DNA of 63,236 nt, counting the filler, from Lenisia limosa (lineage: Eukaryota; Protista; Breviatea): assembly GCA_001655205.1 (NCBI GenBank). It is 12 parts of 12 records of this genome, joined end to end, with 100 filler letters (N's around TTAATTAATTAA, not from the genome) between each part and the next. Parts side by side here need not be neighbours in the genome. Positions count along the whole stretch, not along the records: positions 1 to 17,064 come from LPNZ01005553.1; 11 more parts are not named here. One strand, 5' to 3'. The notes below the pieces were generated by a model, which saw nothing but the letters and a program-made list of their open reading frames with translations, had not been told where the DNA came from and searched no databases. Shown piece after piece: positions 1,075-15,855 of the stretch (position 1 is its first letter; each line of letters begins with the position of its first letter). The translations under genes and the position numbers were made by a program.

Positions 1075-4000
1075 ATGCCAGCTCCCAACAAACGGACGAA
1101 GAAGTTTGAGAAAGGTAAGTTTTGCACGCATGCATCCCTCTTTCCCTCTCTTTTCCCTTAATATATATAGCACATGGAGGTAATATCTTGAAGAAGAAAA
1201 TTAGTCAGCGAAAAGTACGCTCTCGCGTTACCAAGCAGAACACCGAACGTGATCTCAAAGCACTTGCAACTGAGAACCGTTTAAAGGAACAGGAGGCTCA
1301 AGATGAAGAAGAAAAGTTTGCCTTGGGGATTGTTAAAACTTTGAATTTTGACAATTTGCTCTTTCTCTTGTTTTACCTCTCCGTGTTACTCCTTCTAAAT
1401 GGTTTTTCCAAAGTTGAACTAGGTAGTATCATGGTGGGCTGTATTGTATCATACACTGTCCTTTATGTGCCAATATGAAACAATATTGACGCAAGCAGGA
1501 AGGAACTTGAGGCAAAGGAAGAGTTTGCTGATCTGAAGGATCTTGATGAGAGCGACTCCGATGAGGACGAGGACGAGGATATGTCTGGTGATGAAAAGGA
1601 GAAGTTGAAAGAGAAAGACAAGTTACAGGTTGGGAAGGTGTTAATTACAAAATGATCTTTTGATTTTTTTTGTACGATAATGATTTAGAAATTGATCAAC
1701 CAATGGGCTGAAGGAAACGACGCCGACAGAGTTGCTGGACTTCTTCTCATCAGACGTCTATTCATCGCAAAGCCTTCGATGCGTGATGCCATTCTCAGAG
1801 TAGGACGCTTTGGGCGTCACTTTGGTCCTTTAAAAGCCGTTGTCATTTTTAAACAGTGATTCTATACAGCTAACTGAAATCCAACTTACATTGTCCCAAA
1901 TCAGATGAAGTTTGCAACCCTTGATCAATATTTCAATATCCATATCCGAATCGATCTTATGAGCAACAAATTATGACCTTCCAGAAAATGTACACTACTT
2001 TCATCCGCGTAAGCTCGGTGGTGAACACCCACACTGCTGCCGGAATTGGTTTTATGATCAACGGTATTTCTGAGATCTTCGGTGAGGACACAGACGCCGG
2101 GCACCGAAGGGCCTTCAACTCTATCAAACAACTAGCTGTTCATCTGAAGGCTGCGGTGAGGAGCAAAGGGGATTTCTTTGGAAAATCTAGTTTATTTCTC
2201 CTCTTGGGAACTATCTTCCTTTGATTTTGGTCCACTAATTTACGATCACAATCTGCTCTCTCATTTGCTTTCTTGCACTGACTGGATCAGCTTACACAAA
2301 AAGACGAAAGTCACAGAGTGTATAACTGGCAAGTTGTCAATGCTCTCCGACTTTGGACTAAGGTCATTTGTACTCACGCTACTAAGGTTGGTTCATCTCG
2401 TGATTGTTCTCTTTGGGGCTCTAGTTTAGCAATAAAAATAGACTGACATCCGATTTCCACACTGTCTGATATGTGAGTATTACAGTATGTCATTTTTTTC
2501 ATACACCCTCCTTTGACATTTTAGGGTGACGTCAGTGACCTCATTTACCCCCTGGTTCAGGTATGTTAAGGACCGTTCGGGTACACGAATTTTAGGTAAA
2601 TTTGCGTAAATTTTGTAAAGAAAATTAAGTTTCAAGTACCTACTAGGTGGTACTTAAACATTCGTAAATTTACTGTAAAATTTTGGAAACCCGAATGCGA
2701 ACTTTAAAATTTTACGTAAATTTACGGAAAATTCGTGTACCCGAACGGCCCCTTATACTATCATATAGAAGGTTATACTGGCCGGAGCCGTCCACNNNNN
2801 NNNNNNNNNNNNNNNNNNNNNNNNNNNNNNNNNNNNNNNNNCAACTCTGTGCACACAGCTTTCTGCGTGCCTCACAAGCATACGCCTTTTTTAGTCTCCG
2901 ATGCCATCGGATAAAGATGTGTGTCATATTGGTGGTGCCTAATACACCAGATTATCCACGGTATCTCCCGCCTCATGCCGACACCCCGTTTCTTCCCCCT
3001 CCGTTTCCACTGCATTGGCCTTCTCAACGACATTGCCGCCGCGACTGGCTCGCATGTCCCTGTTGCTGCTGACCTTCTCGAGGTTTGCTACGTGCCTTAT
3101 TCTTAACCTCGTGATTTGTTGTACGATATTGAATTCCAATCACCCCTCAGGTCCTTGCACACCCTTCCCTTCATAAGAAGCCCCAAGGAAAGAACCCCGT
3201 GTATGATTTCCGCCTCAACATCAAGGCTGCCGCCTCCACCATTTCCACCAAACTCTATATTGTAGGAACACGAAAGCTATGTCAAATTAACCTTCAAACT
3301 GTATCGTATGATATAATCTGATGATATTCAAGGCTTCACTTTGGTTCGAAAAAAGACTGGATTTCCCGATTAATCCTCGAAAACTATCGATATTTTATCG
3401 GTCTTTTTCGAACCGAAGTGAAGCCCCAATGGTATTGATATCTTTTCTTTTGCTGGGGAACTGAGAAATGAGAAGTTCATTGTAATCCAGGACACCTGCA
3501 TCAACACAGCACTTACGCTTCTGGCCGAGTCTGTGGCAACGTTCTCCACCTCCATTGCCTTCCCCGAAGTTTCCATCCCTATTTCCAACTCCTTAAACAA
3601 ATTCAAGCGCACCATCAAGGTTGGCCTCGGAATACTTATAATTGTCGTTGAAAAGCCTTGCACTAAACTCATCAAATCGTATCATTCCGGTAACTTTGGG
3701 AGACGTCTTGATATGATGCTCAAATCTACAAATATTTTCACGTTTCTAATCTACCAGTCTCCTGTGTTCCGTAAAAAGGCTGCAAACTTTGCTGAAGCTA
3801 TTGAGCAGTGTGTCAAGGTGCGAGGGGGCGTAATTGTCAAGACTCTTTTTGTGGCATTTGTTGTGTTTTGCTCATCTTTTTAGATCTTGAGAAAGAAGCG
3901 TGCGGCAGTTAACTTTGCCCCTTCTGATACTATTAAGGTTTGCTTTATGCGAATTCTGAATAGATTGTGAACAGTTTATAATCTCAATAAGACAGCATAT

Positions 4001-5347: not shown

Positions 5348-8300
5348 ATGCTCTTGAGCTTGGCTCTCCTCTTTATAGTGTCTATCACTTCGTTTGGTAC
5401 TAATGCAATGTAAGCGGCTATTTAACGAGAACCTCGCCACCACTCATTCTTCCACGATCCATCCGTCCTTCTTGTTCCATAAACCTGCCGGATTGGAACC
5501 ACGGTCAAGTGTTCTCCACATCCCCTTTTTATGGTTCAGATCTCTGTCATCAAACGATGTTGTTCATGCCACGAGCGTTGAAGTAGAGACACTCACACTN
5601 NNNNNNNNNNNNNNNNNNNNNNNNNNNNNNNNNNNNNNNNNNNNNNNNNNNNNNNNNNNNNNNNNNNNNNNNNNNNNNNNNNNNNNNNNNNNNNNNNNNN
5701 NNNNNNNNNNNNNNNNNNNNNNNNNNNNNNNNNNNNNNNNNACCCTGTATAGAACAAACTGGTGCCTATGTGGAGCTTGAACAAGATGCGGTCTTAAAGG
5801 TACATCAAACTCTTGATTATTATCATCTTCACAGCTTTCGGGATCAATCTCAACCACAATGACGATGGAGTATTGGTATAAGCTCTCAACTGTGCCTGTG
5901 GAACCACAAACTCATTTTTCATTGGTCACGGTAGGATACTTGACCACTCACATATAGTCAACACTGGGATATTAATGCTGTCTATTTATAAGTTGACTTG
6001 CAAGCTCTTATTTTTGTTAGAAATGTCCAACCAACACAGTTTTCCGGTTTCGGACAGATGCAAACTTTGACCGTTTCTACACACAAATATCAGTTCATTT
6101 ATCTTTGTAGATTGTTACATCATATGATATGCATTTGCCCACACCATACTTTTAACCCGTACAGGAGTCTGGAGAAGTTTCTGTTTCATCCTATCGACGC
6201 AACTCACTTCTTCTGGAAGTCAACGGGGTGAGCATGGGGCCAAATTTTCTCACAATATTAATTGTTTTTTACTCTTCGTTTTCCATTCATATGCCACAAG
6301 TATTTGAATGAAGTCTTAGGCTGGAGTGATTGTTCCGTTGAGATATACCTTGTTCGATGTTTGGCACCATGTGTCTATCAGCATCCAGCCCGGAAGTGCT
6401 GTGAGGCTTCTTCACGGTTTGTTTTTTGGGCCTTCACTGCCATCCATGACAGCTGAAAACAACATTTTTATGTTTACAAACCAACAATTGGCCTTCATTG
6501 GATCAAACGCTTCAGACTTCGAATTGGTGTCCGAATTAAATATCTTGCCACGTACCTTCCAGTCTAACTGCAAACTCTATTTGGGAGGAAGCGTCTCGAA
6601 TTACGCTGCACCGGTATGCTCTGCTATGCTATTGTCACAATTCTAATGTACATTATATGTCTAAGCAAGTTGAATTGATTAAATATCATTCAACAACTTT
6701 GGTTACTTGTCTTTAGGTTTTCGACCCCCTCTTTTCCGCAGCCATTTCTTTCCACAAAGTTCTTATCAAGTCAGAGTACACTACTGATGGTGGGCATCTT
6801 TGACTATTTTGAAATGCTTCGTTCTCTTTTGGTTTCTGTTGCTTTTAAGAAAGCAAAGTCCTCAATTGCTTACGATTTAGCTGCTGTTGTGAAAGACCGT
6901 GCATTCTCTGACTTCGCTGTGGTAAGGAGAGGAAGTTAATCAAGTTACCGTGGAGAGAGGAGGGGGGGCTCATCAAGAGATTTTTTATTTACTTAACACT
7001 ATAGGATGGGACCACTTTGGCATTCTTTGATTTTTCGATGTTTGACAGCGCAGTCTTTACAGTAGGTGGGAGGGCTGTGGGTCAAAGAAGGGTCATGGTA
7101 TAACTGTTTTATGTCTTTTGAGAAAAAGAAAATTACACGTTTTGGAATATCATATTTTGTTTTGCTCTGAAGCCCAATAGTTACTCTTTAGGGAGAAGGT
7201 CTGTTGACCCCGACGTTTGAGGTCAACCCAAGCGACGTTGCCACAGGTGGCCTTGTGTCCCAAAGAGTGGGGGGGGGGGTTGACAACGGAAGGCTTCGCT
7301 AGTGTAATAGGCTTCCCAACGGTCCAAGAAAAGACTACTTCCCAATAAATCCTCGATAAATATCGATATTTTGACGCTCATTTTCGGACCGCAGGGAAGC
7401 CCTAGTATACGCTTGTATGAACCTGGGGGCACTTTTCATGCTGAGAAGGTTAATTGATGCCATTTCCTCAGGCTTCATCCTATTCAGGTATTATTCACCA
7501 TCTTTCTGGTCCCAACAAACATGCTCCTTACCAAAACAAGACTGAATTTGATGGATCGTGGGGCTTCACTTCGGTTCGAAAAAAGACTGAATTTCTCGAT
7601 AAATCGTCGAAAACTGTCGATATTTTACCAGTCTCTTTTGAACCGAAGTGAAGTCCTACTAGATCATCAATCAATAAAATTATTATCCTTTCTTCTATCA
7701 GGAAGCCCAGGAGCCAGAGCTGTTAGTACTGTTTTTACTGTTCAGAGAGCAAGACTGTCTGACTTCCTCCGTATGGCATTTGAAACAAACCGTCAAATTG
7801 AACTTTTGAAAGAAGAGGTTGGTGTTCTCCCTTCTTCCTCGATGTTTCCCTTGTCTCAGCAAGGGTCTTGGGAAACACTGGTTCTGATATTTGGCTTTAC
7901 TGTACAAAACCAAAAACCTTCCTCTTTTAGAACACCAAGACTGTCATAAATGAAAACAGCGGCCTCAGCGCTTCAGTTCAGCCCGACGACTTGATCCGTG
8001 GGGCTTAAGGGGAATGACGTGGATTAACTTCTTAGAACCGCGAAGGGCTTTCAATTGTTACGGACGATATGCGGTTTTGGTGAGCTAAATCCTGAAGAGG
8101 GACATTACTCAAGCTTACATTGCTTATCTCATTTGTTAGGTACTATATATGATGTGTAATACATAAGAAGAACGTGAGCCGCTCAATTAACGTATTAGGA
8201 CTTGGCAGCGTATTCTTACCCGACAACCGAAACGACTTTAATTCTTCACTACAAAGTAACAGACGTAGGCCCTGCGAACGGAAGGAATCCGTTTTTATTA

Positions 8301-9556
8301 CATTACTCTGAGTGAATCTAGTTTTAACAAAATTTCTGTAAAAGGAATTGGTGTAAAAGGCTTCAGCCTGATGTTTTTTGTTGTTTTTTGCTTTTGCCTT
8401 TTTTTATTCTCCATTGCTACATGTCCCCTCTCAGATCTCTAGATCACCACCGTGAGCTCGCCTTTTGGGCTTGGTGGAAGCAATGACATCGCTCCAATGT
8501 TCATTTCTGGAGCGCTTAGATCGGTATGATGGGGGTNNNNNNNNNNNNNNNNNNNNNNNNNNNNNNNNNNNNNNNNNNNNNNNNNNNNNNNNNNNNNNNN
8601 NNNNNNNNNNNNNNNNNNNNNNNNNNNNNNNNNCCTCAGCTCTCATGCAGAAAGTGACCTTTTAGCACTTCAACGGAGTGAGCAAAGATTGGACCTCTTC
8701 TAACTTCTACGTGAATGAATGGGTGACGATGGTGGTCACGTGGAAGGCTGGCAACACGTATCTGAGAGTCAAAGACATTGATACTACTTTTGTGCTTAGC
8801 TCAGGCAGTCTGGAGCCAAATACAAACTTTAAGGTCTCCGTGGGAATGGTAAGTCAGATTGACCTGTTCATTTCTAGGAATATGACACAGACACGCCGTC
8901 GGACTATTTCAAAGGCAGCATAGCCCAGGTATGAGACCGGAATAAATACCACAACGCTTATTAGTTAATTATGTTCAATCCCACGAAAGATTCCTATTAT
9001 TTGCTCTTATCTGACCTTTTTTTGTTTCTTTTATGAATCCCCAGGCCTACCTTTTCGACAAGGTGCTCACGAGTGAAGAAATCGCTGACCTCGAGACACA
9101 GATGTTCTATAAACTGCCTGAGGAATCTGGCATTTCCTACATGTTCAGGTAAGCCATGTGACTTTGACCTGATAAATCCCAATTCAAGTCTAATTCAAGT
9201 TGGGTCAATCTGTAGCTTCTGGCTAATTTCCTCTAGAGGAACATATAAGGAGGATTGGATCGACTATGACAACCTCCAAGTGCAGTCCTACCCAGTATGC
9301 GTCTGAACAGTGATCAATATCGAGTACTCATTGGAGTTAAAACTTAACCTCCATGTTTCTTTGGACTTATTTCTGGTATCTAACTCCCCCAGGCAAACAG
9401 CACAATTGTCGCCAGCACCACTCCCATTGCTATGTACTATCCGTAAGGGGAGGGGGTGACAATCAGATCTCTTCACTGTCCTCTTCATATTCCTTCTACA
9501 ACTATATATCTTCCTGTGCCAAAAGTACAGTACCTGCATATTGTCTTCCTACATAG
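5348..9556 (+). CDS. Secreted protein with two probable LamG/concanavalin-A-like domains (multi-exon, internal gaps)
   Basis: Signal-like start MLLSLALLFIVSITSF. LamG-like segments TMTMEYW, DVWHHVSISI...KLYLGG, NEWVTMVVTW and AYLFDKVLTSEEIADL. Last exon ...AYCLPT*. Confidence 0.65.
7308..7404. mobile_element. hAT-type MITE, subfamily B (TIR tagggcttccctgcggtccgaaaa)
   Basis: taggcttcccaacggtcc...ggaccgcagggaagcccta, with the same core (aaatcctcga..tatcgatatttt) as family A. Partial B copies at ~27390, ~35261 and ~63163. Confidence 0.75.
7559..7658. mobile_element. hAT-type MITE family A
   Basis: Near-consensus copy gggcttcacttcggttcgaaaaaagactgaatttctcgataaa...gaaccgaagtgaagtccta. Confidence 0.85.
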
Positions 9557-9687
9557 GCAGTTTTTACTCGTGTAGTAACAGCCTCCCTCCCGAAGGCTTC
9601 GCAACCGTCGCCCCCCAGTGGCCGCAGTAATGTGGAGAGAGACAAAATTGCAATAATAATAATCGACTATGTACAGCATTGGAGAGG

Positions 9688-12600
9688 TCACGGGATGGTC
9701 CAATCAATGGGGTTGATACTGAGCAAATCATTGACGTTCTCGGAGAAGTTGCAGCCAAAGAACCCTAATGACATTATATGGCTGAAAAAGAGGGGAGGGG
9801 GGACGAAGGGAATTTCGATGAAGAATATTGGCTAAGTACTAATCCCGAACGAATAACCGTAAGGACACAAGAGGGTGAGTATGAGAAGGATATTGCCATA
9901 AATTCATATCAGCATGTATGAAATAATTTATGATATGGTATGCCTGTATTATATGATGTATCACTGAATAACAGCAAGAAAGAAAAGAGGGGAAGGGGAA
10001 AATAAAAATGAGAGAGAAAAAAGCCCTACCAGCTCGACAAGACAATGGCGAGGGGTGACTTGCTGGATGGTTAAATCGGGATCAAATATCCTTTCAAGCA
10101 GACTTTTTATTGGCAATTGTCCAATGGATGCAATGATAATAGAGAATGGGAACTGCGCTCACCAGAGAACTGAGGGTAGTCACAGCCTCCCTTCTTGGCC
10201 ACTTTCTCGTAAAACGCCTGAGCTGCCCCTCCAAAATTGAGCCAAACAGTCTCATCGGCAAGGCCATCTGGAAGTAAAAACGTGTTTCAAACATTGGTAT
10301 TCCCCTCTTCCTCTCCTCAACTCCAAAGAAAAATTGAACACTTGTAAGTATCAATAGCCGGCAACATACCTGCCAGAACATCGACCAGCCACTTATCCCA
10401 TCCAAACGACTTGTGCGAAACTGCAGAGATGAAATGAAAACTGTCGGGGAACAAGTGGACATATTATATGAAACAAAAAAAAGGCCCACAATCAACTTTG
10501 TTGGCTGATAACACGAGGGTTAAAAACAACAAAACAAAACCCAAGCCAGTTGCTTCTGCAGCACCGCATCCCAAAACTGCGGGGAAGTAAAAATGGAAAA
10601 AATAAAAAAGAAGATCATTGCGGATGAAATGCAAATGGTGAACTGGAAAAATGGACTGAAGCCTATTCATTCAAGAAAGAAGTGAAAGAAAAGAAACAAA
10701 AGGAAAGAATTATCGAAAGAAAGAAAGAATTTGGGAAAGAATCGAAGAAAGAAGGGCATACATATTTGACCACTCCTGACAGTGAGCGTTGTGTTCAGTA
10801 GTAGGACACCCTGGTCCGCCCACGATGACAGATCGCCATTTCCAGATGTCGAGAAACCACTGTTCTGGGGAGGGAAATAAATAAAAAGGACTTAACATGG
10901 GGAGGCAACTAGGGCTTCACTTCGGTTCCACAAACCGAACTCAAATTCTTGGGTTTGCATTCCCCCAGATATTGATGCATTTAAGTTCAAAATTGAAAAT
11001 CTTGAAAAAACCTCGATATTGATTAATCTAAACAGCTCTTAATTAATCAATAAACCATGTCTTGCTGCTTAAGAAGGGGTGAAGGGTGTGAGATCGGAAT
11101 ACTCTTGGTGATATCGATAGTTTTCGGGGATTTGTCGAGAAATTCAGTCTTTTTTCGAACCGAAGTGAAGCCGTATACTGAACCATTTAATTCCGGACCA
11201 ACCTCCAGTTCTGTACATAAGTTTTTGAGGCTCTTCGGGAGAGTGCCGGTACCAGAGTATGAGAAAGCCAAACCATCTGCATCACCAGGAGTTGGGTATG
11301 GGTCCTGAAATTATTGTGATAATATACCATAGTGATGAGAAAAAAACAACCTTCCACAAGCTCACGCAGAGAGATATTGGAACGATTATTATGATAGTTT
11401 ATTAAACTTAGTAATCATGATAACACTATTCCGAACACACAAGTGATGTTCAGGAGAAGTTGGAGACAGTATATCGAGAATATGGTCTATGACGACGTTA
11501 ACGACTTTGGATACACCGGCCCCAACCTGGCCTAAAAGAACAACAAGCGTGTCGTTTTGTGGGCACTTCGCGAAGGCTGCAAAAACCTTCTCCGGAGATG
11601 GGAAGATTTCTAGACCAATGACTCACGTGACGTCAACCAACCATTGGCATGAGCGTCAAGATTGATTTTATTGACAATCAGAGAAAGCTTGTGTGAATGC
11701 CTTTCGAACAGATCCCTCCAGTTGTTCTGTTTCAGTGAGTGTAAGAACAAGTTGAGTGAGATATTTCTTCATGCGAGAACCGCTTACATCTGGCACAGTG
11801 TTGATTAAATCATCAACGGTAACGGTCTTCCAGTCCAAGCCATGAGGCTAAATTGGTCAAAAATGATGATGTTAAGTATTGTAAGTAATTCTCTTGCACT
11901 TTCTTACTTAGATCTTCAAATCCCCGACTTTATCATAGTCAATACACTAACCTTCAGAGGTGAAGAGAACTCCGTTCTCACGTGGACTGAAATTGGGCAG
12001 TGGTCAGACCTTTAACGTCAGCCATCGTATAGAACGATAAACAAAACAAGAAACATAGACCGATAAACAAAACAAGAACACAGCCATTGTGTAGATAAGC
12101 AAAACAAGAACACAGCCATCGTACAGATCAACAAAACAAAGCAGTTTCATACCCTTGAACATGGGGATGGTGCTTGCATTGCGTCACATTTGGAAGGATA
12201 TTACTGGTTGTGAACACATGGTCAAGTCTCCATCCTGAATGAAGATGACTTGTGTACAGAAAGTCTCTTTAGACTCAACACGGGAGTCTGTAAAGAACAT
12301 CGAGAGAAACAACCATATCAGATCTTACCTGCTTTCTTTTCCGCTGAGCGGTTACTCCAAAAAGTGAAATTCTCGCAACACTGTGAAGATTAGGTAACAT
12401 TAGTAAGATGATGTTAACATAGACATCAGTATAATAGCTGCCAACCTCTCCATTCTTGTCAACCCAGGCGTCCTTCAGACCAATCCTCGTGCACATCGCA
12501 GACCAAGACTCTCTCTCAGCCAGGGTGAAGCCTGCTGTGTTCATCTGAGTTGGTTAACAAAGATCTGTTCAATGGTTGATGCATTTTTTAGCTTCTTTGA

Positions 12601-15600
12601 TACGTCGCACTGAAATGGTGTAATGTAACCCGAAATTGCCCGAAGCCTAGCAGACTAATAACCTTGGCTTCGCTCCTATCCAGAAAATGACCGAATTTTT
12701 CGATACGATAATTCAGCGATCTTTGGTACCAAAGTGAAACCCTAACAAAACCCATTCATACGTTGGACCCGGGTCGGGCGAGGTCATTCGAGGAAGGTGC
12801 AATCTAAATGATCAGGTCACTGGAGGTAGGATTTCAATCTAATAACAAACATGATTTCCTCGATAAATCCTTGATGAATGTCGAAAAACTTACGTTGAGA
12901 TCACCGATATAGAGAACTTGACAGGGGTCTTGCTTGAACATTGCCTCGACGTTTTTATCCCAGGTGTTGACTCTTTTATAGTGTCTTTCTCCAATATATC
13001 CCACATGTTCACATGAGGTTCTAAGACGAATTAAAGAATCATGTTCACAGGAGGTTCTAAGATGAATTAAAGAATCATGTTCACAGGAGGTTCTAAGATC
13101 AATTAAAGAATCATGTTCACAGGAGGTTCTAAGCTCAATTAAAGAAACTTTATGATCCTAGTTTCCATAGAGACTATGTTGCAAAAAAAAAAAAAAAAAA
13201 CCCACTTTTGGCCAGCATTTGGAACGTAGCATCCATATAAGGCAATTTTGTCACCGCTAGGACTGGGAAGTTGGGCTCGAATCATACGTCCCTCAGACTC
13301 ATACCTTCCAACTTAACGAGTTATCATAGTGCCCATAAGGGGACAGTTCCTCAATTGATTACCTTGAATACAGGTGACAGAGTCCAGAGCGATTGTCGAA
13401 ACCAGAGCCACCCCAGCGTATCTAAAGAAATAACAACACCCAAAAAAATATGAAAATATTATAATATGGAAAAATTTGAACAAAGCTAAGTCTGTTCATC
13501 CTTCCCCAATTTCAACATCGCATTTGTTACCCAAATGAGCATTAAAATACCCACAAACGCGCTGGTATGTGAGAGAGCCACATAAATGTTGCAATCAGGG
13601 AACTGCGTAGACAGAAGAAATAAATTGCTTTCCATAATTTTGAGCTCTGAAAATATAAAGAGCTGACTAGTTTTAGAACTCAAAGAGCAAATAAGAATTA
13701 TACTATCTGGAATGAATCGTGAGTCAGGTCCAAAAAAGAGATATTATACAGCAATTCAAGCGGAGCCCCAAATAATCATCAAAAACCTTAACCCCAAACC
13801 ATTGATAATGAGAATGTTCCAGGGGAATCCAGCCACTCCATCTCGAATCGCGATAGTCTATAAGAAAGGAGTCATGCTAGGTTTTTCTTTTTTAGGACAA
13901 GAGAAATAATATATGAGAAATCTAGGTAAACAAATAAATCAATAGGGATGTCATAATACATTACCATGCTCTCACACCCACTCTCTTTGACGCATATCAG
14001 AAGAAAGAGTAGAAATGTACATGTATATGTCCATACTATGATATAATACTCCCCATTTCCCAATTATTGTAGCAGTTTGTGTTTCAGACGAAGTGTGACT
14101 GACGTCAAGCCATATAACTTGGGCTTCACTTCGTTTCGAAAAAAGACTAAATTTCTCGATAAACTATCGTTATTTTCCCGGATCATCGAAATGCCCCTCT
14201 CTTACCCTAGAAAGCGCACGGAGGCCGTTAACGTTCCAAGAGACGATTTTGGCTACGTCAGCAGTTGGAGGATTCTGAAGGCCATGGTAAGCATATACTC
14301 CGTTCTGAGTTTTGTAGTCGGCTTGGACGGTATGCCACGACATTGGAGGGAGGTTGTCTTGGGGCAGAGGGTAGGAAACGGAACTGAATAACGTGCATTC
14401 TAGAGCAATTATTTAGGATTTCAAGCATTCTAGAGAGATTATTAGGATTTCAAGGAATTCAAGAGAGATTATTTAAAGGTTCAGGGTTTTTGAGAGATTA
14501 TTTAAGGACTTCAGCGGTGTCCTCAGACTGCTAGATTTTTCGATAAAATATTCGAAAACTATTGGAGAGAGCTCAAGACAATCTAAAACAAAAGAACCGA
14601 AAAAAAAGGGGGGGAGTCAAGGGAGGCAGGTGTTTACAAAAAAAGGTAACAATATCAGTCTACTACACAACAGAGATAAAAAGCATGAAAGGCATTACGG
14701 TGTCCTACCATCTTCCGCGATCATTTGGTCAGCGCTTCCATCATTGCCATCTTCATTGTCGAATATAAAGGCTTCTTGGTCTGAAATGGGTTAACCGATG
14801 CAGCTAATTCATATCTATCAGTATCCAGCTGAGATCTTGCTCCAAAAGTGTATATTTAAAAATGCTGATGAAAAAAAGGTTCAGTTTATCATTATCATAT
14901 CAAAGAAACCAGCAAAATATATCATCTCTCGTTGTACTTAGCTTCGCACCTGCATAAGAGGAGTCACCATAAGGGTTAGCAACTAGTTGTTTTGACGAAT
15001 CCTGGTACTGGGTATCTAAAAAGAATAATTCAAACTAATAAGACAATCCACAAAAAACATACTACCTAGATAGTAGAAAAGAACAACCCACTGACAAGGG
15101 TCTGAGACAGTACTTTGCATTTGACTGTACATTGAGAATGAGGGCTGAAGAGTTAGCTCAGTCATTATCTCGTAGAAATTGGTATTGGCCATCGCCCATT
15201 CTTTTTCTCATAATTCAGCTTGTATATGAAGGCTGCCAAGGTTCCTCCGCCCACGCTCCCGTTCATCGCTTGTCTCCAAGTGTCCGACCAATGCCATTAC
15301 CACTATTGAAGAAAGCAAACAGCTAACTCTCCACTTTGCATTTCAACAAGTGCATCATGTATATACACCTGCTCTTACCTGGGAAAATCCATTGGACACT
15401 GGTGCTTTGGCGTTTCCGCACCTGAATAGTCAGCTTCGAACGCGGACGCATTAACAGTTGGAGTGAAACAAACACGACTGAGACCTTGATGAATTCCTGA
15501 TAATAATATACCTGTCTTTTGAGTTTCAATAATTATGGAATCACCCAAGCATCTATACAGTGACCGGATAAGTCTTGACCAATTTTCCTTGGGAAATCAC

Positions 15601-15855
15601 ATAGCAAATCGGTCAAGACTTATCCCAGTCACTGTACATATATTCCGACCTTTCAAGGCTGGATGCAATTTGCTCGAAAGACATGCCCGAAAATGACAAC
15701 GAGGAGTCGACAGAGTTTTGGGGAGGTGCTGAAGAGCCCATAACGTTTTGAGGAGGTGCTGAAGAGTAGTTTTGAGGAGGGGCAGGTCCCGAAGCTGACA
15801 TAAACCGAGGCTTCAGGTCTGTGGACTTGCGGGCGGTTTGCTTTGTTCTTACCAT
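9688..15855 (-). CDS. ExoIII/APE1-family AP endonuclease fused to family-1 uracil-DNA glycosylase; upstream exon begins with a histone H3-tail-like peptide
   Basis: APE motifs: KIVSWNVNGLRA, ILIINELK, YAGVALVS, EGRMI, CYVPNAG, IGDLNV, AGFTLAERE, GWRLDH, GSDHCPI. UNG motifs: IFPSPEKVF, VVLLGQDPYP, GLAFS, PKSLKNL, GDLSSWADQGVLLLNTTLTVR, SHKSFGW, SHPSPLS, FFGC...PIDW*. The APE-UNG junction stays in frame using GT-AG introns. Linkage of the 14.3-15.85 kb exons is inferred. Confidence 0.88.
10910..11175. mobile_element. hAT-type MITE family A, long or composite copy in UNG-domain intron
   Basis: Left TIR tagggcttcacttcggttc at 10910. Reverse-oriented core plus right TIR ttcgaaccgaagtgaagcc ending ~11175. 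No matching TSD, so it may be two partial copies. Confidence 0.65.
12035..12140. repeat. Degenerate ~30-bp intronic tandem repeat
   Basis: gataaacaaaacaagaa(a)ca... recurs about 4 times. Confidence 0.6.
12664..12745. mobile_element. Degenerate MITE family A copy
   Basis: ggcttcgctcctatccagaaaatgaccgaatttttcgata...ccaaagtgaaaccctaa. Confidence 0.6.
13005..13148. repeat. 36-bp minisatellite, 4 copies, intronic
   Basis: Unit atgttcacaggaggttctaagatgaattaaagaatc. Confidence 0.9.
14119..14198. mobile_element. MITE family A copy, internally shortened
   Basis: ttgggcttcacttcgtttcgaaaaaagactaaatttctcgataaa...gccc. Confidence 0.75.
14395..14515. repeat. ~30-bp degenerate minisatellite, 4 copies
   Basis: gagagattatt(t)aggatttcaag-like units. 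Confidence 0.7.
15558..15634. mobile_element. Tc1/mariner-pogo-type MITE (77 bp)
   Basis: TA-CAGTGACCGGATAAGTCTTGACC...GGTCAAGACTTATCCCAGTCACTG-TA, i.e. CAGT termini with TA duplication. Confidence 0.88.

What the first reader, a model, noticed from the sequence alone, without database searches (positions are those of the whole stretch)
9688..14260. Natural in-frame fusion of an ExoIII/APE1 AP endonuclease and a family-1 uracil-DNA glycosylase: a candidate one-polypeptide uracil base-excision-repair machine
Seen: on the minus strand the APE exon ending ...GSDHCPISVHVRTEFSSPLK (~11952-12009) splices phase 0 to PHGLDWKTVTVDDLINTVPD (11788-11847). It then joins NNWRDLFERHSHKLSLIVNKINLDAHAN (11642-11726) and, after a 32-nt GT-AG intron, EIFPSPEKVFAAFAKCPQNDTLVVLLGQ (11527-11609) | DPYP (from 11304), with no stop. 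Residues equivalent to APE1 N68/E96/Y171/D210/N212/D283/D308/H309 (WNVNG, INELK, CYVPN, GDLN, RLDH, SDHC) and the UNG motifs GQDPY, GLAFS, LLLN and HPSPLS are all present. Established: UNG creates the abasic site that APE1/ExoIII incises next, and in model eukaryotes these are separate genes. Inference: the fusion channels the toxic AP intermediate between the two active sites. I do not know of a characterised example, but novelty is unverified.
Basis: partly seen in the sequence, partly recalled or inferred. Interest (0 to 1): 0.92.

Follow-up and report, generated by a model that had tools for sequence, protein, structure and literature searches.

The report
AP endonuclease fused to uracil glycosylase
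A many-exon eukaryotic gene, confirmed by one spliced mRNA contig, joins the enzymes for the first two steps of uracil repair in DNA (a uracil-DNA glycosylase and an APE1/ExoIII-type AP endonuclease) into a single protein, a pairing I did not find among several hundred other long glycosylase proteins.

Summary
On the minus strand, 22 GT-AG exons (15015 to 9688) form one open reading frame. A 3805-nt contig from a polyA RNA run reproduces every exon length and covers exactly the predicted exon bases in 30 depth bins. That includes the junction exons 12009-11952 (last AP-endonuclease exon, SDHCP) and 11847-11788 (linker).

Residues 196-454 of the 699-aa model align end to end with E. coli exonuclease III, with all catalytic residues kept. 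Residues 517-696 are 46% identical to E. coli Ung, with GQDPY, GLAFS, LLLN and HPSPLS intact. The glycosylase half has no methionine, and an in-frame TAG sits just upstream of its first exon. It can therefore only be made as the fusion, or from an alternative first exon not seen here.

- The last acceptor is at 9764, not 9781.
- The gene starts further upstream, probably at an ATG at 15855. That exon encodes a near-perfect copy of the histone H3 tail.

Three surveys of long UNG proteins showed many partners (Nth, Fpg, PIF1, PARP and one endonuclease IV-UNG fusion), but none of the ExoIII/APE1 type. Hand-off of the abasic site within one polypeptide is plausible but untested. I rate this a new variant of a known kind, of moderate interest.

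The parts
15650..15855 (-). E1 (inferred first coding exon): ATG at 15855, encodes MVRTKQTARKST..., a histone H3 tail look-alike followed by a P/S/Q-rich low-complexity region
   Evidence: First in-frame ATG after a stop, GT donor at 15649. RNA run X1 holds 0.94 of its sampled words. PDB phmmer hits only H3 N-terminal peptides. Its link to the rest of the gene is inferred from frame and from contig-length arithmetic (281 = 49+43+189).
15379..15421 (-). E2 (inferred), 43 nt
   Evidence: AG/GT sites, keeps the frame between E1 and E3. No direct read evidence.
15096..15144 (-). E3, 49 nt if the acceptor at 15146-15145 is used. The 3' end at 15096 is RNA-supported. Alternative: unspliced upstream, with an ATG at 15192.
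   Evidence: The loose-end letters of the RNA contig at 15015 equal the reverse complement of 15096-15125. GT donor at 15095.
14950..15015 (-). E4, 66 nt, N-terminal extension
   Evidence: RNA depth equals 66 bases in bin 14913-15100. Contig boundary at 15015.
14709..14780 (-). E5, 72 nt, acidic N-terminal extension
   Evidence: RNA depth equals 7 + 65 bases in two bins.
14206..14399 (-). E6: end of the extension and start of the AP endonuclease domain (SWNVNGLRA)
   Evidence: RNA piece, record 420-613. The last 25 aa hit only ExoIII/APE1 structures in the PDB.
13800..13857 (-). E7 (first half of the INELK motif; catalytic Glu split over the E7/E8 junction)
   Evidence: 58 RNA bases in bin; frame.
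13559..13646 (-). E8
   Evidence: 88 RNA bases in bin. A donor 8 nt upstream of the naive site is needed for frame and record length.
13363..13421 (-). E9
   Evidence: 59 RNA bases in bin.
13206..13311 (-). E10 (CYVPNAG)
   Evidence: RNA piece, record 819-916; the rest is masked as repeat.
12894..13020 (-). E11 (GDLN)
   Evidence: RNA piece, record 925-1051.
12762..12803 (-). E12, 42 nt
   Evidence: Fills record 1052-1093 exactly; bin depth.
12446..12544 (-). E13
   Evidence: RNA piece, record 1094-1192.
12329..12380 (-). E14 (FTFW)
   Evidence: Bin depth.
12153..12234 (-). E15 (WRLDH)
   Evidence: Bin depth. The only PDB hit is an exonuclease III.
11952..12009 (-). E16: last AP endonuclease exon (SDHCP), ends in phase 0
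   Evidence: 54.0 RNA bases in bin 11958-12154 and 6 in the next bin. Aligns to the C-terminus of E. coli XthA.
11848..11951 (-). Junction intron, 104 nt, GT-AG. Unspliced read-through would end the protein after 11 more codons. An in-frame TAG at 11850-11848 precedes E17.
   Evidence: No RNA depth beyond the exon bases.
11788..11847 (-). E17: 60-nt linker exon, phase 0 at both ends
   Evidence: 66.0 RNA bases in bin 11761-11957 = 60 + 6.
11642..11726 (-). E18: start of the UNG domain (NNWRDLF aligns with the first conserved Trp of E. coli Ung)
11610..11641 (-). 32-nt GT-AG intron
   Evidence: Its removal is required by record length (420 nt between record positions 1192 and 1613) and by bin depth.
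11527..11609 (-). E19 (ends ..LLGQ)
11203..11304 (-). E20 (DPY.., GLAFS)
   Evidence: RNA piece, record 1614-1714. PDB hits are all UNG.
10762..10864 (-). E21 (GVLLLN)
   Evidence: RNA piece, record 1715-1817. 40 PDB UNG hits, best E = 1.8e-7.
10370..10420 (-). E22
   Evidence: Fills record 1818-1868.
10163..10267 (-). E23
   Evidence: RNA piece, record 1869-1973.
10030..10062 (-). E24 (HPSPLS)
   Evidence: Fills record 1974-2006.
9688..9764 (-). E25 coding part; stop TGA at 9690-9688
   Evidence: RNA piece, record 2008-2195, covers 9763-9576.
9576..9687 (-). 3' UTR, overlapping the last exon of a convergent plus-strand gene
   Evidence: The plus-strand AG acceptor at 9574-9575 and the plus-strand intron ending at 9235/9236 show that the rest of the contig is a plus-strand gene.

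Best explanation
This is one eukaryotic protein-coding gene (minus strand, about 15855 to 9576, probably 25 exons). Its single mRNA encodes a protein of about 699 residues with four parts. First comes a disordered N-terminal extension of about 190 residues that probably begins with a histone H3 tail look-alike. Next is a complete ExoIII/APE1-type AP endonuclease domain (about 196-460), then a linker of about 26 residues carried mostly by a symmetric 60-nt exon. Last is a complete family-1 uracil-DNA glycosylase domain (about 487-699). Shown: the exon structure, the in-frame splice across the domain boundary in polyA RNA, homology of each half, and retention of every catalytic residue. Inferred: both domains are active, and the protein carries out the first two steps of uracil base excision repair. 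The UNG domain flips out and removes uracil. Because the AP endonuclease is tethered within a few nanometres, it takes over the abasic site as UNG lets go, cuts 5' of it, and leaves a 3'-OH and a 5'-deoxyribose phosphate for a polymerase and ligase. Both enzymes bind the same site on DNA, so this is a sequential hand-off made fast by high local concentration, not simultaneous binding or a tunnel. The net activity is that of a uracil-specific DNA nicking enzyme.
For: The RNA contig matches all exon lengths and per-bin exon base counts, with zero depth in intron-only bins. All 24 modelled introns are GT-AG (21 RNA-supported), and the ORF has one stop, at its end. Residues 196-454 align with E. 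coli XthA 2-262 (E = 2e-10), with Asn, Glu, Tyr, Asp/Asn, Asp and Asp-His aligned. Residues 517-696 align with E. coli Ung 37-220 at 46% identity (E = 1e-40). Exon pieces hit only ExoIII/APE1 or only UNG structures in the PDB. The UNG residues that are invariant in a 10-sequence alignment (Q, D, P, Y, F, N, H, P) are present. There is no Met anywhere in residues 388-699, and an in-frame TAG sits directly before E17. An independent fusion of the other AP endonuclease fold (endonuclease IV) to UNG, in the same order, exists (P0303), so this coupling has arisen more than once.
Against: There is only one RNA run, held as assembled contigs, which drop minor isoforms and carry no strand information. 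The same contig also runs into a convergent neighbour gene, so contigs here can bridge genes. No protein-level evidence exists. Enzyme activities and the hand-off are not tested. The first three exons are inferred. Pfam could not be run on the spliced protein, and single exons gave no Pfam hit. The AP endonuclease half is divergent (24% identity to XthA). I cannot see whether the genome also has separate UNG or APE genes.
Confidence: 0.85

Rival explanations
1. Two neighbouring genes (APE upstream, UNG downstream) are occasionally joined by read-through splicing, or UNG is mainly expressed from an alternative promoter and first exon hidden in an upstream intron. On this reading the fusion is a minor or non-functional isoform.
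For: Contigs show presence, not absence, and drop rare variants (notes). Reading through the E16 donor gives a stop after 11 codons, as if E16 were once a terminal exon. From my own knowledge, human UNG uses alternative first exons.
Against: The gap between the halves is a 104-nt intron, with no room for a terminator plus promoter plus first exon. The UNG half has no Met, and a TAG precedes E17 in frame. The assembled (dominant) RNA path is the fusion, at uniform depth.
Confidence: 0.07
2. The RNA contig is an assembly chimera, or DNA contamination, and the apparent junction is an artefact.
For: The contig does merge with a convergent plus-strand gene through overlapping 3' ends. Only one RNA data set was available.
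Against: Intron-only bins have zero depth, so this is not DNA. A k-mer chimera would not remove exactly one canonical GT-AG intron, keep the frame, and reproduce the expected 420 nt between record positions 1192 and 1613.
Confidence: 0.02
3. The fusion is real, but its main role is not housekeeping repair. As a self-contained uracil-specific nicking enzyme, perhaps steered by the H3-like tail, it could turn uracil into strand breaks on purpose. Examples are destruction of uracil-containing foreign DNA or programmed breaks after cytosine deamination.
For: UNG followed by APE is the route by which deaminated DNA is broken in antibody class switching and in degradation of APOBEC-edited viral DNA (papers listed, e.g. 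PMC2212854 and PMC2877740, seen by title and abstract only). The unusual N-terminal H3 look-alike suggests targeted rather than general recruitment.
Against: No deaminase or other partner is visible in the window. Nothing distinguishes this role from ordinary repair at the sequence level.
Confidence: 0.1

Closest known systems
Separate UNG and APE1/ExoIII of model organisms (E. coli Ung and XthA; human UNG2 and APE1)
   Same: Same two catalytic domains with the same catalytic residues, acting on consecutive steps of uracil base excision repair. From my own knowledge, the 'passing the baton' model has APE1 taking over the abasic site from the glycosylase.
   Different: Here the two are one polypeptide joined by about 26 residues. 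The UNG N-terminal targeting region of animals is replaced by the endonuclease. The whole protein carries a disordered extension of about 190 residues.
Endonuclease IV (Nfo)-UNG fusion P0303 (511 aa), on an intronless contig with ankyrin and HNH genes that looks like a giant virus (L003)
   Same: AP endonuclease at the N-terminus, family-1 UNG at the C-terminus, short linker. nfo model TIGR00587 scores 191.8 bits (residues 23-261), with UNG at residues 291-511.
   Different: The AP endonuclease is the unrelated TIM-barrel endonuclease IV fold, not ExoIII/APE1. It is uncharacterised and from a different kind of genome. It is convergent, not homologous, in its N-terminal half.
Other UNG fusions in public data: Nth/HhH-GPD-UNG (P0115, P0001), Fpg/Nei-UNG (P0354), DEDD exonuclease-UNG (P0197), PIF1-UNG, photolyase-UNG, PARP-UNG (P0317)
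   Same: A family-1 UNG covalently joined to another DNA-repair activity. Nth and Fpg partners also process abasic sites, as lyases.
   Different: None has an ExoIII/APE1-type hydrolytic AP endonuclease. Most are from metagenomes and uncharacterised.
Mth212, an ExoIII homologue that nicks DNA directly at uracil (my own knowledge; the top structures named 'Exodeoxyribonuclease' are, by my recollection of the entry codes, Mth212)
   Same: The net reaction is uracil-specific incision of DNA.
   Different: Mth212 does this in one active site without a glycosylase. The gene here keeps two separate active sites.
Histone H3 tail mimics in non-histone proteins (for example the H3K9-like motif of DNA ligase 1; my own knowledge)
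   Same: A short H3-like stretch on a DNA replication or repair enzyme that could be bound or modified by histone-tail readers and writers.
   Different: Here the look-alike sits at the very N-terminus and copies 10 consecutive H3 residues, far more than the usual 4-5-residue motifs. Its attachment to this gene is inferred, not shown.

Membership tests
ExoIII/APE1 (Xth) AP endonucleases, EEP superfamily | Homology over the whole nuclease domain to a characterised member | tested here: met
   Residues 196-454 align with E. coli XthA 2-262 of 268, 24% identity, E = 2e-10. Exon pieces hit only ExoIII/APE1 structures.
ExoIII/APE1 (Xth) AP endonucleases, EEP superfamily | Catalytic and metal-binding residues (Asn, Glu, Tyr, Asp-x-Asn, Asp, Asp-His) | tested here: met
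   SWNVNG, INELK, CYVP, GDLNI, WRLD and SDHCP align with FNING, LQETK, GYFP, GDMNI, LRID and SDHAP of XthA.
ExoIII/APE1 (Xth) AP endonucleases, EEP superfamily | Score above the Pfam PF03372 gathering threshold | not testable with these tools
   The spliced protein has no reference and was not typed in. Single exons (at most 64 aa) gave no Pfam hit.
ExoIII/APE1 (Xth) AP endonucleases, EEP superfamily | AP-site incision activity | not testable with these tools
   Needs recombinant protein on an abasic-site (THF) oligonucleotide.
Family-1 uracil-DNA glycosylase (UNG) | Homology over the catalytic domain | tested here: met
   46% identity to E. coli Ung 37-220, E = 1e-40. 38-46% identity to many database UNGs. 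MAFFT extends the match to the first conserved Trp.
Family-1 uracil-DNA glycosylase (UNG) | Motifs GQDPY (catalytic Asp), GLxFS (Phe stacking on uracil), LLLN (Asn reading uracil), HPSPLS (catalytic His and intercalating Leu) | tested here: met
   All are present and aligned. They fall in the invariant columns of alignment A1.
Family-1 uracil-DNA glycosylase (UNG) | Uracil excision activity; inhibition by Ugi | not testable with these tools
   Needs an enzyme assay.
Single-polypeptide fusion (as opposed to two genes) | One mature mRNA with a continuous frame across the domain boundary | tested here: met
   One polyA-RNA contig. Exon lengths and per-bin base counts match across 12009-11952 | 11847-11788.
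Single-polypeptide fusion (as opposed to two genes) | No independent start for the downstream domain | tested here: met
   No Met in residues 388-699. TAG in frame at 11850-11848. An alternative upstream first exon cannot be excluded.
Single-polypeptide fusion (as opposed to two genes) | Full-length protein present in cells | not testable with these tools
   Needs proteomics or a western blot.
Histone H3 tail mimic | Sequence identity with the H3 N-terminus, at the N-terminus | tested here: met
   M-V-RTKQTARKST against H3 M-A-RTKQTARKST. The only PDB hits are H3 tail peptides (E = 0.59 because the match is short).
Histone H3 tail mimic | Belongs to this protein; is bound or modified by H3 readers and writers | tested here: inconclusive
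   The exon is in polyA RNA (0.94 of words) and fits frame and contig length. No read shows the E1-E2-E3 joins. Binding is not testable here.

The most novel reading that the evidence does not exclude
This fusion is the organism's only UNG, so every uracil excision is obligatorily coupled to incision. Its N-terminal copy of the histone H3 tail is methylated or read like H3K4/K9, steering a uracil-specific nicking enzyme to particular chromatin states. Repair, or deliberate breakage, would then be guided by chromatin marks.
Probability: 0.12. Interest if true: 0.8.

Novelty: new variant of a known kind. Interest (0 to 1): 0.58.

Why it matters
How a glycosylase passes its toxic abasic product to the AP endonuclease is a long-debated point in base excision repair. 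A natural covalent UNG-APE pair, alongside an independent endonuclease IV-UNG fusion found here, is evolutionary evidence that close coupling of these two steps is advantageous. It also gives a ready-made protein for comparing tethered and split enzymes. A compact, self-contained uracil-to-nick enzyme could serve as a reagent. The H3-tail look-alike, if it truly heads this protein, would link uracil repair to chromatin readers in a way not known from model organisms.

Tried and rejected
- **Pfam on ten single exons:** no hits, because the pieces are too short.
- **PDB search with AP-endonuclease exons E10, E11 and E13:** nothing useful. The end of E6 and E15 did work.
- **Exact search of JGI metagenome contigs for the spliced E16/E17 junction,** to obtain a referable cDNA: 0 hits.
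- **Full HMMER scan of 1.84 billion representatives with exon E21:** 43 hits. None was the gene itself, a close relative, or an ExoIII partner.
- **Exact look-up of eight window ORFs in the 15-billion-protein collection:** none present. This genome's proteins are therefore not in the database, and the organism stayed coded. Cluster names for the nearest UNGs were uninformative.
- **Operon or trans-splicing idea** for the 1610 nt of contig beyond the stop codon: rejected. Those exons have plus-strand GT-AG introns, so they belong to a convergent gene.
- **Loci around UNG genes:** 80 viral and 80 bacterial loci, within 3 kb and 2.5 kb. No ExoIII-like sequence was fused. One nfo-like gene (L019) and one xth-like gene (L129) lay nearby on the other strand.
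- **ESM Atlas with P0303:** only plain endonuclease IV clusters.
- **Left out:** the spliced 699-aa protein has no reference, so I did not submit it to Pfam, homology search, structure prediction or fold search.

Full report
**What is in the sequence**

Reading the minus strand of 9600-14400 and translating the three frames shows many short open segments. Together they spell an ExoIII/APE1-type nuclease followed by a family-1 uracil-DNA glycosylase, separated by introns.
- the exon ending at 11952 (..SDHCPISVHVRTEFSSPLK), followed by a GT donor;
- a 104-nt intron;
- the exon 11847-11788;
- the exon 11726-11642;
- a 32-nt GT-AG intron;
- the exon 11609-11527, ending ..LLGQ;
- the exon from 11304, beginning DPYP.

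**RNA evidence**

A public polyA RNA run (X1) and a DNA-like run (X2) of the same coded organism hold this stretch. Laid on 9200-15100, X1 gives one 3805-nt contig on the minus strand, in eight listed pieces.

I built an exon model in which every intron is GT-AG. Cumulative exon lengths reproduce all eight record coordinates of the contig. For example, 14399-14206 is record 420-613, 12544-12446 is record 1094-1192, 11304-11203 is record 1613-1714, and the last exon starts at record 2007. The 420 nt between record positions 1192 and 1613 is exactly the sum of the six short exons that include the AP endonuclease-UNG junction.

As a second check, the reported RNA depth in each of the 30 bins equals the contig depth (27.3) times the fraction of predicted exon bases, to within one base. 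That gives 66.0 bases in 11761-11957 (60 of the linker exon plus 6 of the last endonuclease exon) and 54.0 in 11958-12154. Depth is zero in the intron-only bins 9791-9987, 10973-11169 and 12549-12745. The bins that deviate have visible causes: a masked repeat, a second MITE-containing contig, bases that fit either side of a splice junction, 5 nt at the stretch's edge, and the exons of the convergent neighbour gene.

It is not DNA contamination.

- The last intron uses the acceptor at 9766-9765, not the one at 9783-9782. This gives ..HPSPLSCRAG|FFGCNF.., which matches other UNGs.
- One donor lies 8 nt upstream of the obvious site (the exon ends at 13559).
- The gene does not start at the Met near 14343. 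The exon 14399-14206 has an acceptor at 14401-14400 and is joined in RNA to 14780-14709 and 15015-14950, in frame. It is then joined to an exon ending at 15096, because the contig's loose-end letters equal 15096-15125.

**The likely 5' end (inferred)**

Further upstream, the simplest frame-preserving model is 15144-15096, 15421-15379, and a first exon 15855-15650 starting at the first ATG after a stop.

That first exon encodes MVRTKQTARKST.., ten consecutive residues identical to the histone H3 tail. Its only PDB matches are H3 tail peptides. X1 holds 0.94 of its sampled words. The contig's 281 nt upstream of 15015 equals 49 + 43 + 189, which would place the contig's end 17 nt inside this exon.

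This part is inferred, not shown. The alternative is a start at the ATG at 15192. Either way the protein carries an N-terminal extension of 100-190 residues rich in S, Q, P and D.

**The 1610 nt of contig beyond the stop codon**

These are not a downstream cistron. The contig leaves the window sequence at 9576 and 9235 at sites that are AG acceptors on the plus strand. The loose-end letters encode ..PEESGISYMF on the plus strand. A convergent gene overlaps the 3' UTR, and the assembler merged the two. This removes the operon idea, but it shows that contigs here can bridge genes. That is why the intron-exact arithmetic at the junction matters.

**What the two halves are**

The full model is 699 residues with a single stop. 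I fetched E. coli xthA and ung as references and ran local BLAST.

| Half | Fusion residues | E. coli match | Identity | E-value |
|---|---|---|---|---|
| AP endonuclease | 196-454 | ExoIII 2-262 of 268 | 24% | 2e-10 |
| UNG | 517-696 | Ung 37-220 | 46% | 1e-40 |

In the endonuclease half, every catalytic position aligns: SWNVNG/FNING, INELK/LQETK, CYVP/GYFP, GDLNI/GDMNI, WRLD/LRID, SDHCP/SDHAP. In the UNG half, GQDPY, GLAFS, LLLN and HPSPLS are kept.

Pieces searched apart support both assignments:
- The end of exon 14399-14206 hits 43 PDB sequences, all ExoIII/APE1.
- The WRLD exon's only hit is an exonuclease III.
- The two central UNG exons hit only UNG structures.

A MAFFT alignment with short bacterial-type UNGs puts the first conserved Trp of UNG at NNW, residue 490. 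ExoIII's C-terminus aligns to about residue 460. The linker is therefore about 26 residues, and the 60-nt exon, in phase 0 at both ends, supplies 20 of them.

**Could UNG be made on its own?**

Not from what I can see.
- The last Met in the protein is residue 387, and residues 388-699 contain none.
- The codon directly before the linker exon is TAG, in frame.
- The junction intron is 104 nt, too short to hold a terminator, a promoter and a first exon.
- Reading through the donor at 11951 would end the endonuclease after 11 more codons. This looks like the remnant of a former terminal exon. A minor retained-intron isoform giving an endonuclease-only protein is possible.
- An alternative UNG first exon elsewhere cannot be excluded with contigs.

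**Is the pairing known?**

The spliced protein has no reference, so I searched by pieces and through proxies.
- A full HMMER scan with the LLLN exon found 43 proteins. None was this gene, a close relative, or a protein with an ExoIII partner.
- Window ORFs are absent from the 15-billion-protein collection, so this genome is not represented there.
- Three length-restricted surveys of long UNG-containing proteins gave 337, 1279 and 485 significant hits, with 120 shown each. They showed a wide range of partners: Nth/HhH-GPD, Fpg/Nei, PIF1 helicase, photolyase, RNase H, DEDD exonuclease, PD-(D/E)XK nuclease, Macro and PARP.
- One of these, P0303, is a clear endonuclease IV-UNG fusion. The nfo model scores 191.8 bits against a cut-off of 129.65. 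It sits on an intronless contig with ankyrin and HNH genes.
- No row carried PF03372.
- Among 80 viral and 80 bacterial UNG loci, no ExoIII-like sequence was fused to UNG.
- Seven literature searches found no natural AP endonuclease-UNG fusion.

These checks are partial. Only the top 120 rows of each survey are visible, and eukaryotic proteomes are thinly covered.

**Mechanism**

Established knowledge (my own): UNG leaves an abasic site that it binds tightly. APE1 or ExoIII cuts 5' of that site. The two enzymes occupy the same face of the DNA, so they act in turn.

Inference: the 26-residue tether keeps the endonuclease within reach. The abasic site is then incised as soon as UNG releases it, or UNG is displaced sooner. 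This limits exposure of the toxic intermediate. The net result is a uracil-specific nicking enzyme. Whether that serves routine repair or deliberate breakage cannot be told from sequence.

The independent endonuclease IV-UNG fusion, in the same domain order, argues that coupling these two steps is selectively useful.

**Verdict**

Both domains look catalytically competent. Hand-off is plausible but untested.

It is a new variant of a known kind. Both families and the pathway are textbook, and UNG fusions to other repair enzymes already sit uncharacterised in databases. This ExoIII/APE1-UNG pairing in an intron-rich eukaryotic gene was not found elsewhere in my limited searches. Interest is moderate (0.58), raised somewhat by the probable histone H3 tail look-alike at the N-terminus.

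Noticed in passing
window 15855-15805 (minus strand): The probable first exon of the gene begins M-V-RTKQTARKST-DLKPR. This is 10 consecutive residues identical to the histone H3 N-terminal tail, at the same distance from the initiator Met, and is followed by three PPQN repeats. The exon is present in polyA RNA.
   Followed up: partly
window 3332-3426, 7562-7656, 7308-7402, 11111-11172, 12665-12707, 14112-14163: A palindromic MITE-like element of about 95 nt (ends GGGCTTCACTTCGGTTCGAAAAAAGAC...) sits in several introns of this gene and in neighbouring genes. In the DNA run its depth is hundreds to thousands of times that of the flanks, so it is very abundant in the genome.
   Followed up: partly
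window 13004-13146 (intron upstream of exon 13020-12894): A 36-nt tandem repeat (4 copies, 96% alike) includes the acceptor and first 17 nt of the exon. Each upstream copy carries its own ..TTAG acceptor and stays open in the gene's frame (12-residue unit TSCEHDSLIxLR). Alternative acceptor use would insert in-frame repeats into the endonuclease domain. The RNA contig uses the proximal acceptor.
   Followed up: partly
window 14395-14484: A 30-nt tandem repeat (2.7 copies) overlaps the acceptor of exon 14399-14206. This is a second case in this gene of a splice acceptor lying inside a tandem repeat.
   Followed up: no
window 11610-11641: A very short (32-nt) GT-AG intron containing the palindrome TGACGTCA. 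RNA arithmetic shows that it is removed.
   Followed up: partly
window about 8666-9763, plus strand: A convergent plus-strand gene, with exons ending near 9146 and starting at 9235/9237 and 9576. Upstream exons encode ..NEWVTMVVTWKAGNTYLRV.., ..FDKVLTSEEIADLETQMFYKLPEESGISYMF. Its last exon overlaps the 3' UTR of the fusion gene, and the RNA assembler merged the two transcripts into one contig.
   Followed up: partly
L003:285-1820 (protein P0303): A natural endonuclease IV (nfo)-UNG fusion of 511 aa, on an intronless 9.3-kb Logan contig beside ankyrin-repeat and HNH endonuclease genes (giant-virus-like). It is a convergent counterpart of the finding.
   Followed up: partly
proteins P0317, P0354, P0197, P0026, P0058 (database hits): Family-1 UNG occurs fused to many other DNA-metabolism domains in public data: PARP with WGR and an RPA-like OB fold (1324 aa), Fpg/Nei, DnaQ-like DEDD exonuclease, Macro, photolyase (Deinococcus), PIF1 helicase, RNase H, and tandem UNG-UNG.
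   Followed up: no
window 8537-8633: A 97-base run of N (scaffold gap) inside the neighbouring plus-strand gene region.
   Followed up: no
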